A DNA stretch of 63,983 nucleotides, filler included, from Choristocarpus tenellus KU-1152 (lineage: Eukaryota; Protista; Phaeophyceae): NCBI GenBank assembly GCA_964200185.2. It is 12 parts of 12 records of this genome, joined end to end, with 100 filler letters (N's around TTAATTAATTAA, not from the genome) between each part and the next. Parts side by side here need not be neighbours in the genome. Positions count along the whole stretch, not along the records: positions 8,076 to 14,581 come from CAXNAD020007986.1; positions 14,682 to 18,196 come from CAXNAD020019518.1; 10 more parts are not named here. One strand, given 5' to 3'. Both the position numbers and the translations under genes were made by a program. How positions within the stretch are numbered: the stretch's first letter is position 1; every line of letters starts with the position of its first letter. Below are positions 8,076-14,699 of the stretch, one piece after another. The notes under the pieces were generated by a model. That model made no database searches and was not told the origin of the DNA. It saw only the letters and a program-made list of their open reading frames with translations.

Positions 8076-8098
8076 CCCCCCCGCAGATACTTTGGGTC

Positions 8099-11000
8099 TG
8101 GACTCAATTCAACACAACAATCTCATATACACAAAATAAGGTACACCTCACTATTGTCCTATTTTGCACACTCCCCCATGAGAGTGCAGGCAATGAAGAG
8201 TTGCTGGAACTCTCAAACCTAAGACAACTTATTGTGTACACTCCCCATTCTGCACACTTGCCTATGAAAATGGAAGTAAAGGCGTCAGATTAGTTCAATT
8301 ATCACACTTATCACATTTATCTTGCCAACGCAGTATAATAGAATGCAGATTACTTCAATTTTAACACACGACATTCATCTAATCAACACAGTGTCTACAA
8401 AGTCTTCTGCCTGCTTCTTGCGTAATCTTTTGGTCAAGATGTCTGCTAGTTGGAGTGCCGTGGGAATATATTTTACTATAAAAAATCCTTTGCTAACATA
8501 TTCCCTGGTGCATTTCAGCTTGATGTCGACATGTCTTGTCCGTCCATTGAAACCTTCGGTTATCGCTGCTTGTATCGCTCCTCGATTGTCTCCATACCAA
8601 ACCGTGACCCCTTTGAGTATGCCCAGCTCCCCCAGAATTCCTCTGAGAAATATTGCATGCCTCATTCCATGCACCATTGCTGTCCATTCCGCCTCTGATG
8701 AAGATGTGATTACAGCTCCCTGCATCTTGGATTTCCATGCAACAGGTGCTCTATTGATGAGTATTAAATACCCGGTCACGCTCCGCCTTGATGCAGTGTC
8801 ATTGTCTTAAATACCCAGTCTGAGTCTCCATAACTGACCAGGCCCCCATTGTCCATTTCACCACCAGCAGGATAGTGTATCCCTACTTTTGTGGTGCCCA
8901 ATAGGTACCGTAGAACATGTTGCAGCCCTTTCCAGTGTCGATCACATGGAGATGCTGCATATCTTCCCAGTTCCCGCTCACTGTTGGATATGTCTGGTCG
9001 TGTCATCCCGGCTAGGAACATAAGTTTCCCCAGGATGGTGCGGTAGGGTTTGTGCCTCTCGTCCAGCTCCTCCTCGTCAGTTCTTCTTGCTGTCAGGTCC
9101 ATTCCTGGGTTTAGAGGTGATGAGGTATTTCGTACTTCTGCAGATCCCATTCCTTCTCGAACAATGCTCTCTGCATAGAAATGCTGGTCTAGTGTGATGG
9201 TTGATGGCTCCTGGTGGCCTATTGAGATGTCACTTGCCATGCCCATCAAACAATATGCATCATCTGTGCTTGATCTTAGCAGGTTCACTATATTCTCGCC
9301 CAGTTCTTCCGTATCTCCAGAGAGTAAGCCCCTGTAGTCGACCCTGGGTTGTTCAGCTATCCTAGCTGACATCCGTTGTCCACTAGGTGAACTAAGGGGA
9401 ATCGGATCGACCGTAATATCGGAATCCCGATCAGAGTCGTCTTCACTCTCAGAATCATCCGTCGAAGTCATGGTCTCTCTCTCCCCCACGAAGTCCATGA
9501 TGTGTTTGTCTGGCTCGAGCGTCACTTGGGCTGAGGTTACCAACTTGGCCTCTTGAGGAAGCCAGATGTGCCAGCATAATGATGTGCGATCGTGTCCCAT
9601 TATTTTACCTCTCTTGGCGTATGGGTGGAACTTTGCGCTGGCCCCTCTCTGCTGCTTGTCCTGATGAACGTAGCACTCGCTCCCCCAGGCCCGAAGTCTA
9701 TCATAATTGAAGGATTTACCTGTTAGACGCTCGCATGGCGTCTCTCCTCCGAGGTATTCATGTGGCATGCCTCCAGTCTTGAAGGCGACGTCCGTGATGG
9801 CAAAGAACCAATACTCGTCGCCCAGTCCAGCTCTTACCAGTTGACTCCTTGCTGCCCCCATGAGTTGCTTTATCGCCCTTTCGGCGATTCCGTTGCTTTG
9901 TGGTGTTCTCGGTGGAGATTTCCTCCATCGGGTACCGTTGTTCGCCAGCATCCTTTGGAACTTCACCGATCTCCCAAGCTCGCCAGCACCATCCCCACTG
10001 ATGCATTTGACTGGTATACCTTCCCTGGCCATCTGGTCGATATAAGCAGCGGTTGCGTCCGTCGCTGCGTTTTTTGTCTTCAATCCATAAACCCTCTTGT
10101 CTCTGCTGCTCTCATCGACGAACACCTGAAAATATTGATGGCCAGTGATGTCTGCTTTAAAGGTCCCGCCAAATCTGTATGGACAACCTCGCCGGGCTGT
10201 TTGGGGGTCCTGCCACCCCGTTGATAGCTTAGGGCCTCAGACTTGCATTCCTTGCAGGTCTCTCGCATTGCAGTTCTGACGCCACAGTAGCATCGGTGAT
10301 CTCCAACAGTCCACGCTTCACGAGGTTCTTGATAGCTGAAGGGTTGATGTGACCTAATATGTTATGCCAGTCCTTTAATGTCAGCCTCTGTTTTTGGTTG
10401 GCTCGTGCAGCGTTGACTCTCAATTCTTGTTCCATGTTGATTATGGTTCCAGTTAAATTTAAGAACCCCCCCGATTTTTGTAGGTTTATCTTGGGCGAAT
10501 TCTTGGAGGCCCTCAGATAACTTTCCTTTGTTCCTCAGCCGATAAATTCTCCTCCATTCCGTCGTGTACTTCCAGTACTCAATATGCGGCATGGTAGACC
10601 TGGGACCCATAGAACATCCTTCAGAACCACTCTTGTTGGTTTGCCGTCCTTGTCCATCACCATTAGAACCATATCCCCCATTTCCTTTGCTTCCAATTTC
10701 CCATTGTTTCCGAAGGTGCATGTGTGTTTGGTGTCCCGAGTACTTCTGAGATCTTCACGATCAGGTGTAAGATGTAAGTTTGCTCCAGAGTCACATAATA
10801 TCTCGACTTGTCTTCCACTGGAGGAGTTGAACACCACACTTTTGTTAACCTCCTCGTCTGCTGTTACCTTGAAACTGGAGAAGGAGCGCGCTTGGTTTCC
10901 ATCGACTCTTTTGCTGCTCCCCATGAGTTGGAGGTGGCGGAAATGTTCCGGGTGCCATCCCAGGCGGACGTGTTGCCGGCGGCTTTCCATTTAAGTATCG

Positions 11001-11158
11001 GTAGCAATTCTGCCATCGATGGTTCATCCTTAAACAGTATCCACATTGGTTTGGACTGAGGCCACTTCCAGCTGATCCTTTAGTCTTCCAAGCATGGCCA
11101 CTCTTCACATTGCCATGCATTGCTACATAATACTCCATCATGACCATTCTGCCGTCTG
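8099..11158 (-). mobile_element. Ty1/copia LTR retrotransposon, defective (left arm)
   Basis: Gag knuckle CGYCLRMNHRWQNC, protease ILCDSGAN, integrase WHNILGHIN and PQSNGIAER, RT C-terminus TRPDIS, RNase H SSSEAEW and ADILTK. Frameshifted, RT core deleted, no 5' LTR. Confidence 0.95.
8375..10125 (-). pseudogene. pol: Copia pol, mirror copy on the left arm
   Basis: ORFs 8776-10125 and 8375-8779 match the right arm except for four integrase substitutions (L/S, R/K, S/Y, F/S). Confidence 0.9.
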
Positions 11159-11195
11159 GTTGATACCATGTGGCCTATTTGCAAGACCTTGCATA

Positions 11196-12417: not shown

Positions 12418-14282
12418 ATGCGAGACCTGCAAGGAATGCACGTCCGAGGCCCTAAGCTATCAACGGGGTGGCAGGACCCCCAAGCAGCCCGACGAGGTTG
12501 TCCATACAGATTTGGCCATCAATATTTTCAGGTTTTCGTCGATGAGAGCAGCAGAGACAAGAGGGTTTATGGATCAAAAACAAAAAACGCAGCGACGGAC
12601 GCAACCGCTGCTTATATCGACCAGATGGCCAGGGAAGGTATACCAGTCAAATGCATCAGTGGGGATGGTGCTGGCGAGCTTGGGAGATCGGTGAAGTTCC
12701 AAAGGATGCTGGCGAACAACGGTACCCGATGGAGGAAATCTCCACCGAGAACACCACAAAGCAACGGAATCGCCGAAAGGGCGATAAAGCAACTCATGGG
12801 GGCAGCAAGGAGTCAACTGGTAAAAGCTGGACTGGGCGACGAGTATTGGTTCTTTGCCATCACGGACGTCGCCTTCAAGACTGGAGGCATGCCACATGAA
12901 TACCTCGGAGGAGAGACGCCATGCGAGCGTCTAACAGGAAAATATTTCAATTATGATAGACTTCGGGCCTGGGGGAGCGAGTGCTATGTTCATCAGGACA
13001 AGCAGCAGAGAGGGGCCAGCGCAAAGTCCCACCCATACGCCAAGAGAGGTAAAATAATGGGACACGATCGCACATCATTATGTTGGCACATCTGGCTTCC
13101 TCAAGAGGCCAAGTTGGTAACCTCAGCCCAAGTGACGCTCGAGCCAGACAAACACATCATGGACTTCGTGGGGGAGAGAGAGACCATGACTTCGACGGAT
13201 GATTCTGAGAGTGAAGACGACTCTGATCGGGATTCCGATATTACGGTCGATCCGATTCCCCTTAGTTCACCTAGTGGACAACGGATGTCAGCTAGGATAG
13301 CTGAACAACCCAGGGTCGACTACAGGGGCTTACTCTCTGGAGATACGGAAGAACTGGGCGAGAATATAGTGAACCTGCTAAGATCAAGCACAGATGATGC
13401 ATATTGTTTGATGGGCATGGCAAGTGACATCTCAATAGGCCACCAGGAGCCATCAACCATCACACTAGACCAGCATTTCTATGCAGAGAGCATTGTTCGA
13501 GAAGGAATGGGATCTGCAGAAGTACGAAATACCTCATCACCTCTAAACCCAGGAATGGACCTGACAGCAAGAAGAACTGACGAGGAGGAGCTGGACGAGA
13601 GGCACAAACCCTACCGCACCATCCTGGGGAAACTTATGTTCCTAGCCGGGATGACACGACCAGACATATCCAACAGTGAGCGGGAACTGGGAAGATATGC
13701 AGCATCTCCATGTGATCGACACTGGAAAGGGCTGCAACATGTTCTACGGTACCTATTGGGCACCACAAAAGTAGGGATACACTATCCTGCTGGTGGTGAA
13801 ATGGACAATGGGGGCCTGGTCAGTTATGGAGACTCAGACTGGGTATTTAAGACAATGACACTGCATCAAGGCGGAGCGTGACCGGGTATTTAATACTCAT
13901 CAATAGAGCACCTGTTGCATGGAAATCCAAGATGCAGGGAGCTGTAATCACATCTTCATCAGAGGCGGAATGGACAGCAATGGTGCATGGAATGAGGCAT
14001 GCAATATTTCTCAGAGGAATTCTGGGGGAGCTGGGCATACTCAAAGGGGTCACGGTTTGGTATGGAGACAATCGAGGAGCGATACAAGCAGCGATAACCG
14101 AAGGTTTCAATGGACGGACAAGACATGTCGACATCAAGCTGAAATGCACCAGGGAATATGTTAGCAAAGGATTTTTTATAGTAAAATATATTCCCACGGC
14201 ACTCCAACTAGCAGACATCTTGACCAAAAGATTACGCAAGAAGCAGGCAGAAGACTTTGTAGACACTGTGTTGATTAGATGA
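12418..14282 (+). pseudogene. pol: Copia pol: integrase core, internally deleted RT, RNase H (frameshift near 13850)
   Basis: FVDESSR, SGDGAGE and QSNGIAER are present. HQEPSTI is fused directly to TLDQHFYAESIV. RNase H is encoded by ORF 13878-14282. Confidence 0.9.
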
Positions 14283-14479
14283 ATGTCGTGTGTTAAAATT
14301 GAAGTAATCTGCATTCTATTATACTGCGTTGGCAAGATAAATGTGATAAGTGTGATAATTGAACTAATCTGACGCCTTTACTTCCATTTTCATAGGCAAG
14401 TGTGCAGAATGGGGAGTGTACACAATAAGTTGTCTTAGGTTTGAGAGTTCCAGCAACTCTTCATTGCCTGCACTCTCAT

Positions 14480-14558
14480 GGGGGAGTGTGCAAAATAGGA
14501 CAATAGTGAGGTGTACCTTATTTTGTGTATATGAGATTGTTGTGTTGAATTGAGTCCA
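14480..14558 (+). repeat. Polypurine tract and start of the copia 3' LTR, interrupted by a MITE B end
   Basis: gggggag (14480-14486) is immediately followed by TGTGCAAAAT at 14487. The mirror lies at 8099-8177. A MITE B terminus, gacccaaagtatct, starts at 14559. Confidence 0.65.
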
Positions 14559-14699
14559 GACCCAAAGTATCTGCGGGGGGGNNNNNNNNNNNNNNNNNNN
14601 NNNNNNNNNNNNNNNNNNNNNNNNNTTAATTAATTAANNNNNNNNNNNNNNNNNNNNNNNNNNNNNNNNNNNNNNNNNNNNATTTTGGGGATACTTCAA

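What the first reader, a model, noticed from the sequence alone, without database searches (positions are those of the whole stretch)
8076..14581. 6.5-kb palindrome of two head-to-head defective copia elements: candidate hairpin-RNA 'killer' locus
Seen: the entire contig is an inverted repeat with ~3-kb arms covering gag to the 3' LTR start. Both 5' LTRs are absent. The arms carry private mutations, so the inner part is not a simple in silico mirror: a 27-bp deletion in the right arm near 12515, a 4-bp insertion in the left arm near 11125, and several substitutions. A related copy that retains the RT N-terminus exists at 63045. Established: maize Mu killer is an inverted duplication of a transposon whose read-through hairpin yields siRNAs that silence the family in trans. 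Inference: transcription from either flank would give ~3 kb of dsRNA against this copia family.
Basis: partly seen in the sequence, partly recalled or inferred. Interest (0 to 1): 0.8.

Follow-up and report, generated by a model that had tools for sequence, protein, structure and literature searches.

The report
Palindromic contig of two dead copia copies
This short-read contig from the brown alga Choristocarpus tenellus folds back on itself because it joins two broken copia-type retrotransposon copies head to head; the inverted repeat is in the sequence, but much of its symmetry is probably made by the assembler, and nothing here shows that it makes silencing RNA.

Summary
The inverted repeat is real in the contig, with about 3.07-kb arms (8076-11147 and 11545-14581).

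- **Spacer:** it is about 400 nt and asymmetric. It is gag coding sequence that continues the right copy.
11159-11199 is only the loop of an 11-nt stem at the junction.
- **Arms:** they differ by 66 substitutions and 5 indels, all in the inner half. The outer 1498 nt are identical and run to both contig ends to the base.

The organism is Choristocarpus tenellus. Its assembly is short-read only (SPAdes, k up to 127, N50 6.8 kb). I therefore read the identical outer arms as one collapsed graph edge walked twice. Reads of 150 nt cannot prove that 3-kb arms exist at one locus.

The inner arms are two distinct dead copies. Each has private frameshifts, and synonymous differences are in excess (dN/dS 0.38, P = 0.008). 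They therefore diverged as replicating lineages, not by decay after a foldback. Both lack most of RT.

The hairpin-RNA "killer" idea is chemically possible, since a read-through RNA would fold. No flank, promoter, transcript or small RNA can be examined here. I rate it an ordinary inverted pair of transposon fragments, possibly not contiguous in the genome.

The parts
8076..11147 (-). Left arm: a defective Ty1/copia copy with its sense on the minus strand. It is 5'-truncated inside gag, at the point matching 11545 of the right copy. It runs through Pol_BBD/protease, integrase, the RT-deleted pol and the pol stop, into the probable start of the 3' LTR at the contig end.
   Evidence: Inverted-repeat pairs I1-I5. 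Global arm alignment. Pfam Pol_BBD 5e-14 and SH3_retrovirus 4.4e-13 on minus-strand ORFs, and gag_pre-integrs. tblastn of C. tenellus relatives.
11148..11158 (.). An 11-nt stretch abutting the end of the left arm. It is the exact reverse complement of 11200-11210. I read it as a possible snap-back or templated insertion at a repair junction; that reading is inference.
   Evidence: blastn-short, 11/11 match on the opposite strand. Sequence read. My own estimate, not a tool result, of an 11-mer next to the junction matching within about 100 nt by chance is roughly 2e-5.
11159..11199 (.). The 41-nt loop of the small stem. Its origin is unknown: either native gag sequence or filler.
   Evidence: No similarity to P0017 upstream of residue 105. 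The relative P0055 starts too far downstream to decide.
11200..11544 (+). Unpaired part of the right copy: gag core, with no counterpart in the left arm. Together with 11148-11199 it forms the asymmetric spacer of about 400 nt.
   Evidence: BLASTP against P0017 (1e-49, homology from 11202) and against P0055 (84% identity). Retrotran_gag_2 hit is weak, E = 0.007.
11545..14581 (+). Right arm: a defective Ty1/copia copy with its sense on the plus strand. It carries gag C-terminus, protease motif, Pol_BBD, gag_pre-integrs, integrase, SH3 domain, RT-deleted pol, RNase H C-terminus, pol stop at 14280-14282 and the probable 3' LTR start.
13084..14581 (.). Outer zone of the arms, together with 8076-9573. 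It is 1498 nt, 100% identical between arms, and ends exactly at both contig ends. I read it as a single collapsed assembly-graph edge traversed in both orientations.
   Evidence: Exact identity length of 1498. Only two perfect runs of 127 nt or more exist between the arms, 1498 and 244 nt. Assembly made with SPAdes at k up to 127.
13441..13461 (+). In-frame internal deletion of most of the reverse transcriptase, about 226 residues relative to the relative P0002. The same deletion is present in the left arm at 9196-9216.
   Evidence: tblastn: P0002 aa 3-315 end at 13461 and aa 542-628 start at 13441, in the same frame. The mirror-image result is seen on the left arm. RVT_2 is present in relatives but not in window ORFs.
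13843..13853 (+). Frameshift shared by both arms, between the RT remnant and the RNase H C-terminal part. The mirror position is about 8804-8814.
   Evidence: P0027 aa 111-243 align to 13444-13842 and aa 245-305 to 13854-14036, in different frames. Frame map.
12516..12517 (+). Site of the 27-nt deletion private to the right arm. The left arm retains 10141-10167.
   Evidence: Relatives P0004, P0005 and P0008 align through the 27 nt on the left arm only.

Best explanation
The piece is one complete contig of the short-read (SPAdes) assembly of the brown alga Choristocarpus tenellus. It runs through a head-to-head junction between two different, dead members of one Ty1/copia family.

**The two copies.** Both have lost the 5' LTR and part of gag, and both lack most of reverse transcriptase. 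The inner 1.5 kb of each arm is a distinct sequence, about 4-6% apart, with its own frameshifts. These sequences diverged while the lineages were still copying themselves.

**The outer arms.** The outer 1.5 kb, identical and ending symmetrically at both contig ends, is most likely one collapsed repeat edge of the assembly graph. The assembler walked it once in each direction and stopped where the graph branches inside the LTR.

**The junction.** The junction (11147|11148), with its 11-nt inverted copy of nearby sequence, looks like a break-repair scar. That is inference.

**Function.** The locus is transposon debris. It would give a long hairpin RNA only if an outside promoter read into it, and there is no evidence for that.
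For: **Shown**
- Inverted repeat and its exact geometry.
- Organism and family. Copia domain order.
- Assembly type 'Short Reads', 27,308 contigs, N50 6,777 bp. SPAdes 3.8.1 with -k 21,57,71,99,127 --careful on 150-nt paired reads.
- Arm-to-arm perfect runs of 127 nt or more are only the outer 1498 nt and one 244-nt block. The contig is therefore a simple hairpin path with two doubly used edges.
- Private lesions in each arm: left +4, +1 and +2 nt; right -1 and -27 nt, plus an in-frame stop at 12317-12319.
- Shared lesions lie only in the identical zone.
- Differences between arms are 26 synonymous to 35 non-synonymous, dN/dS 0.38. A null matched to the observed substitution spectrum gives 17.1 +/- 3.3 synonymous, P = 0.008.
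- The 11-nt inverted match sits at the junction.

**Inferred**
- The collapsed-edge explanation. From memory, SPAdes pops short variant bubbles, so sparse differences in the outer zone would have been erased while dense ones in the inner zone survived.
- The repair-scar reading of the junction.
Against: - No reads, coverage values or assembly graph are available, so the junction could be chimeric.
- The uneven divergence could instead be biological, through arm-to-arm gene conversion or recombinant elements.
- LTR retrotransposons are not normally 5'-truncated on insertion. Two truncated copies meeting at their 5' ends needs a rearrangement, which is less parsimonious than a single foldback.
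- The synonymous excess is moderate (P = 0.008) and rests on frames inferred from relatives' gene models.
- The paper's main text once lists C. tenellus among 'long-read species'. This conflicts with its Table S1.
Confidence: 0.55

Rival explanations
1. The junction is not in the genome. The contig is a mis-join, caused by chimeric library molecules or a wrong graph path, between two copies of a multi-copy family that lie elsewhere. No palindromic locus exists.
For: - The contig has no unique flank and is symmetric to the base.
- The assembly is highly fragmented and short-read only, and repeats are collapsed: only 9.9 Mb of 164 Mb is annotated as transposon.
- Continuity beyond the insert size cannot be established with 150-nt reads.
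- Inverted chimeras are a known library artefact. They are documented for long reads in PMC12870357.
Against: - A single-molecule foldback artefact gives identical arms and a central breakpoint. Here the inner arms differ by about 6% and five indels, and the spacer is asymmetric.
- An 11-nt inverted repeat is far too short to mislead a graph with k of 21 or more.
- From memory, assemblers normally remove low-coverage chimeric links.
- No adapter-like sequence was recognised by eye in the loop.
Confidence: 0.27
2. It is a true in-situ foldback, that is, an inverted duplication of one copia copy. A snap-back at the 11-nt inverted repeat formed it. A 334-nt deletion next to the centre, neutral decay of the inner arms, and arm-to-arm gene conversion that keeps the outer arms identical followed.
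For: - The 11-nt stem with a 41-nt loop sits exactly at the end of the left arm.
- Both arms share the same RT deletion and the same frameshift.
- The divergence steps down outward (6%, then 1.4%, then 0), as conversion tracts would produce.
- From memory, deletions next to the centre are a known way for long palindromes to become stable.
Against: - Decay after duplication should be neutral, but synonymous differences are in excess (dN/dS 0.38, P = 0.008).
- It needs three extra events: a deletion, long decay and conversion.
- The identical zone is equally explained by assembler collapse.
Confidence: 0.1
3. One reading: the locus is real, is transcribed from a flank across both arms, and the hairpin RNA is diced into 21-nt small RNAs that silence this copia family in trans (Mu killer-like).
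For: - An RNA of 10700-12000 folds into one long hairpin, -931.7 kcal/mol.
- There are 26 perfect arm-to-arm runs of 21 nt or more, covering 2738 nt.
- In Ectocarpus, 21-nt small RNAs are enriched on transposons. On copia and gypsy elements they concentrate towards the 5' part of the element body, and how they are triggered is unknown (PMC12477816).
- Precedent: Mu killer (PMC3440606).
Against: - No promoter, transcript or small-RNA evidence exists.
- Both 5' LTRs are missing and both 3' LTRs face outward.
- The flanks are not assembled, and whether the locus is real is itself uncertain.
- Inverted transposon fragments are common, and few act as silencers.
Confidence: 0.08

Closest known systems
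Maize Mu killer (partial inverted duplication of MuDR, read through from a flanking gene; PMC3440606)
   Same: Both are inverted duplications of a partial, defective transposon of kilobase length. Both could give a hairpin RNA several kb long, homologous to the active family.
   Different: - Mu killer is a DNA transposon derivative with a defined flanking promoter, a demonstrated hairpin transcript, siRNAs and heritable trans-silencing. None of these is shown here.
- This is an LTR retrotransposon pair in a brown alga.
- The arms are about 6% diverged in the inner half.
- The locus is known only from an unanchored short-read contig.
Head-to-head Ty1 pairs in yeast (inverted Ty1 elements acting as fragile sites; recalled from memory, not checked here)
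   Same: Both consist of two Ty1/copia-superfamily elements in inverted, head-to-head orientation, separated by a few hundred bp.
   Different: - The yeast pairs are full-length elements with LTRs and are mapped on a chromosome.
- Here both copies are 5'-truncated and RT-deleted, and their chromosomal context is unknown.
Palindromic 'hairpin-path' contigs of de Bruijn-graph assemblers, and foldback reads of long-read platforms (PMC12870357)
   Same: - The contig is symmetric to the base.
- The outer arms are identical and longer than k.
- There is no unique flank.
   Different: - The centre is asymmetric and the inner arms are genuinely different sequences, so the contig is not a plain mirror artefact.
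- The long-read foldback mechanism does not apply, because the assembly is short-read only.
Non-autonomous, internally deleted copia derivatives reported in Ectocarpus (for example gag-only Copia-N families, PMC12477816)
   Same: It is a copia family member of a brown alga that lacks its own reverse transcriptase but keeps open reading frames for other domains.
   Different: - Here the deletion removes about 226 residues of RT in frame, while integrase and RNase H remnants are kept.
- The Ectocarpus examples keep only a gag-like ORF.

Membership tests
Ty1/copia (Pseudoviridae) LTR retrotransposon | Domain order gag - protease - integrase - RT - RNase H, with integrase upstream of RT | tested here: met
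   gag, Pol_BBD, gag_pre-integrs, rve (weak) and SH3_retrovirus occur in that order on each arm. Relatives with SH3 followed by RVT_2 align collinearly. The RNase H-type C-terminus ends at 14282.
Ty1/copia (Pseudoviridae) LTR retrotransposon | Copia-type reverse transcriptase (Pfam RVT_2) | tested here: not met
   No RVT_2 hit in any window ORF. About 226 residues are missing relative to P0002 at 13441-13461. Only an RT C-terminal remnant is left. These are defective derivatives, not autonomous members.
Ty1/copia (Pseudoviridae) LTR retrotransposon | Two long terminal repeats, primer-binding site and polypurine tract | tested here: inconclusive
   No direct repeat of 30 nt or more in the piece. 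The 5' ends are absent. Only purine-run/TG candidates for a 3' LTR start are seen, at 14420 or 14488. The contig ends 94-162 nt later.
Mu killer-type hairpin-RNA silencer locus | Inverted duplication of transposon sequence at one genomic locus | tested here: inconclusive
   It is present in the contig. The contig is an unanchored short-read graph path whose outer arms are probably one collapsed edge. Long-range contiguity is unproven.
Mu killer-type hairpin-RNA silencer locus | Read-through transcript from a flanking promoter spanning both arms | not testable with these tools
   No flank is assembled and no RNA-seq is accessible.
Mu killer-type hairpin-RNA silencer locus | Small RNAs derived from the hairpin, and silencing of the family in trans | not testable with these tools
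   No small-RNA data exist for C. tenellus in the sources reached. Only the general association of 21-nt sRNAs with transposons in Ectocarpus is available (PMC12477816).
Long-read foldback or missed-adapter artefact | Assembly built from long reads; near-perfect palindrome with a central breakpoint | tested here: not met
   Table S1 lists the assembly as 'Short Reads'. The inner arms are about 6% diverged, with a spacer of about 400 nt that is asymmetric.
De Bruijn-graph hairpin-path contig | Arms identical over more than k, ending symmetrically at both contig ends, with no unique flank | tested here: met
   1498 nt are identical and pair to the last base at 8076 and 14581, with k max 127. The graph itself could not be inspected.

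The most novel reading that the evidence does not exclude
The head-to-head copia pair is a real single locus in Choristocarpus. It is read through from a neighbouring promoter, and its hairpin transcript is a primary trigger of the 21-nt small RNAs that target this copia family. This would be the first identified dsRNA source for transposon silencing in brown algae, a lineage that has little or no cytosine methylation and lacks H3K9 and H3K27 methylation.
Probability: 0.07. Interest if true: 0.6.

Novelty: new member of a known kind. Interest (0 to 1): 0.2.

Why it matters
How brown algae recognise and silence transposons is an open question. They have little or no cytosine methylation and lack the classical repressive histone marks. 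They have a single Argonaute and 21-nt small RNAs enriched on transposons (PMC12477816). A transcribed inverted transposon pair would be a natural trigger for such small RNAs. If this locus were real and expressed, it would give a concrete and testable entry point.

As it stands, the finding mainly shows how a short-read assembler turns an inverted junction inside a repeat family into a neat palindrome. Symmetric, flank-less contigs of this kind should not be read as evidence for long genomic palindromes.

Tried and rejected
- Other C. tenellus contigs of the family, the contig's neighbours and earlier notes could not be fetched.

**Checks that gave nothing**
- Rfam scan of the piece: no hit.
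- Tandem Repeats Finder: only trivial 9-12-nt repeats.
- Whether 11151-11201 is native gag sequence. The only close gag relative, P0055, starts downstream at the position matching 11283. The distant P0017 shows no similarity there. This stays unresolved.

**Ideas considered and rejected**
- Nanopore foldback read or missed-adapter artefact. I considered this because the paper's main text lists the species among 'long-read species'. I rejected it after Table S1 showed 'Short Reads', and because the inner arms differ.
- RIP-like mutation. The differences are 40 transitions to 26 transversions, with no strong directional bias.
- A simple snap-back product at the 11-nt stem. The left arm resumes 334 nt further in (at the position matching 11545, not 11211), and no microhomology is visible at that point.

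**Not used**
- The large HMMER search, structure prediction and the collection scans (viral, metagenome, bacterial genomes). None of them can bear on a brown-alga repeat junction.

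
Full report
**1. The observation**

The piece 8076-14581 (6506 nt, no N) is an inverted repeat from end to end. The repeat finder gives five collinear inverted pairs and no direct repeat. A global alignment of the piece with its own reverse complement places the left arm at 8076-11147 and the right arm at 11545-14581.

The arms differ by 66 substitutions (40 transitions, 26 transversions) and five indels. 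All five indels are extra bases in the left arm:

| Left arm | Size | Matching site in right arm |
|---|---|---|
| 10141-10167 | 27 nt | 12516/12517 |
| 10259-10260 | 2 nt | 12425/12426 |
| 10734 | 1 nt | 11952/11953 |
| 10919 | 1 nt | 11768/11769 |
| 11124-11127 | 4 nt | 11564/11565 |

- **The centre is not a short loop.** Between the arms lie about 400 nt (11148-11544) with no partner. They are gag coding sequence in frame with the right copy. P0017 residues 105-403 align to 11202-11999 (E = 1e-49), and P0055 is 84% identical.
It is the loop of an exact 11-nt stem (11148-11158 / 11200-11210) that sits precisely where the left arm ends.
- **Divergence is extremely uneven.** There are no differences in the outer 1498 nt, 8 in 9574-10140, and about 6% in 10141-10920.

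The two arms also end at the two contig ends, paired to the last base. The contig therefore holds no unique sequence outside the element.

**2. What the sequence is**

The closest proteins are unnamed products of the brown alga Choristocarpus tenellus (up to 92% identity). Next come Discosporangium and Sphacelaria. The window's own 330-aa product sits on a contig of 6506 nt, so the piece is a whole contig.

Pfam finds, in order on each arm, gag (weak), Pol_BBD, gag_pre-integrs, a weak integrase core and the retroviral SH3-like domain. A protease-type DSG motif lies at the end of the gag frame. Relatives carry RVT_2 after the SH3 domain, which is the copia order.

Lesions shared by both arms:
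- In the window, P0002 residues 316-541 have no counterpart. Both arms carry the same in-frame loss of most of RT, at 13441-13461 and 9196-9216.
- Both carry the same frameshift near 13843-13853.

pol ends with a typical copia RNase H C-terminus and a stop at 14280-14282. About 300 nt follow, with purine-run/TG candidates for the start of the 3' LTR at 14420 or 14488.

Private lesions lie only in the inner zone:
- Left arm: +4, +1 and +2 nt frameshifts.
- Right arm: -1 nt, -27 nt and an in-frame stop at 12317-12319.

Both copies are thus dead, 5'-truncated and RT-deleted.

**3. Where the contig comes from**

The genome belongs to the Phaeoexplorer project (bioRxiv 10.1101/2024.02.19.579948). 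Its Table S1 lists Choristocarpus-tenellus as 'Short Reads', 164 Mb in 27,308 contigs, N50 6,777 bp. One sentence of the main text places the species among the 'long-read species'. I follow the table, which fits the contig sizes seen. Short-read genomes were assembled from 150-nt paired reads with SPAdes 3.8.1, k = 21 to 127, --careful.

This changes the weight of the observation.

- In a de Bruijn graph, the two arms of an inverted repeat are one edge and its conjugate wherever they are identical over more than k.
- Between these arms, only two perfect runs reach 127 nt: the outer 1498 nt and one 244-nt block.
- The contig is therefore a simple hairpin path: outer edge (reverse), variant A, junction and spacer, variant B, outer edge (forward).
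- That accounts for the base-perfect symmetry of the ends, the perfect identity of the outer zone, and the stop inside the LTR, where the graph of a repeat family branches.
- From memory, SPAdes also removes short variant bubbles. Sparse differences in the outer zone would then have been erased, while dense ones survived.

The '3-kb perfect-to-near-perfect arms' are consequently not independent observations of two genomic sequences. Reads of 150 nt cannot show that both arms extend 3 kb at one locus.

**4. Are the arms a duplicate of each other?**

I used reading frames fixed by the relatives' alignments. The arms differ by 26 synonymous and 35 non-synonymous changes, giving dN/dS of 0.38. I placed the same substitution types at random on the same codons. 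That null gives 17.1 +/- 3.3 synonymous changes, and P(null >= 26) = 0.008.

Part of the divergence therefore arose under selection on the proteins. This means it arose while the two lineages were still being copied, not by neutral decay after an in-situ foldback. The inner arms are best read as two different family members.

No annotated C. tenellus protein matches either inner variant at above about 97%. So there is no sign that either variant was borrowed from another assembled copy.

**5. The junction**

The left arm ends at 11147. The next 11 nt are an exact inverted copy of 11200-11210, just 41 nt away. My own estimate, not a tool result, for chance placement of such a match next to the junction is about 2e-5.

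A plain snap-back at this stem would make the left arm resume at the position matching 11211. It resumes at 11545 instead, and no microhomology is visible there.

Two readings remain:
- a short templated (snap-back) insertion at an end-joining junction between two broken elements; or
- a foldback followed by a 334-nt deletion next to the centre.

Both are inference. Whether 11151-11201 is native gag sequence could not be decided.

A library or assembly chimera cannot be excluded without reads. A single-molecule foldback artefact, however, would give identical arms. An 11-nt repeat cannot mislead a graph with k of 21 or more. The long-read foldback artefact (PMC12870357) does not apply to a short-read assembly.

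**6. The functional claim**

An RNA across 10700-12000 would fold into one long imperfect hairpin, -931.7 kcal/mol. The arms share 26 perfect runs of 21 nt or more, covering 2738 nt. So a read-through transcript would be a good Dicer substrate.

In Ectocarpus, 21-nt small RNAs are enriched on transposons. On copia and gypsy elements they concentrate towards the 5' part of the body, and the trigger is unknown (PMC12477816). The precedent is Mu killer: a partial inverted duplication read through from a flanking gene (PMC3440606).

Against the claim:
- Both 5' LTR promoters are missing.
- The two 3' LTRs face outward.
- No flank is assembled.
- No RNA or small-RNA data can be reached here.

The claim is an analogy, not a finding.

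**7. Verdict**

| Reading | Probability |
|---|---|
| Real head-to-head junction of two dead copia copies, turned into a neat palindrome by the assembler | about 0.55 |
| Junction not in the genome | about 0.27 |
| True in-situ foldback with later decay and conversion | about 0.10 |
| Functional hairpin-RNA silencer | about 0.08 |

Inverted transposon fragments are common, and this one is unanchored. Interest is low unless read mapping, long reads and small-RNA data show a single transcribed locus.

Noticed in passing
window 13441-13461 and 9196-9216: Both arms carry the same in-frame deletion of about 226 residues of reverse transcriptase relative to P0002, and the long ORF stays open (12325-13878). 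P0005, from another contig, also lacks RVT_2 between the same flanks. An RT-less but otherwise coding derivative may therefore be a propagated non-autonomous subfamily in C. tenellus.
   Followed up: partly
window 11148-11158 / 11200-11210: An exact 11-nt inverted match with a 41-nt loop sits right at the arm/spacer junction. It resembles the short templated insertions seen at end-joining junctions.
   Followed up: partly
window 9574-11147 versus 11545-13083: The differences between arms show an excess of synonymous changes (26 syn to 35 nonsyn, dN/dS 0.38, P = 0.008). They are concentrated at third codon positions (9, 21 and 31 differences at positions 1, 2 and 3).
   Followed up: yes
window 8076-8082 and 14575-14581: The contig begins with C7 and ends with G7. 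The assembly path stops at a homopolymer inside the probable LTR, a place where short-read graphs often break.
   Followed up: no
window 14400-14500 (mirror 8157-8257): There are two similar purine-run/TG motifs about 70 nt apart (GGGGAGTGTACACAATAAG at 14411 and GGGGAGTGTGCAAAATAGG at 14481). Either could mark the polypurine tract and 3' LTR start. A 9-nt tandem repeat lies at 14336-14358.
   Followed up: no
bioRxiv 10.1101/2024.02.19.579948, main text versus Table S1: The paper is inconsistent about this genome. One methods sentence lists C. tenellus among 'long-read species', while Table S1 sheet B says 'Short Reads'. The strain is given as KU-1152 in sheet A and KU-2346 in sheet B.
   Followed up: partly
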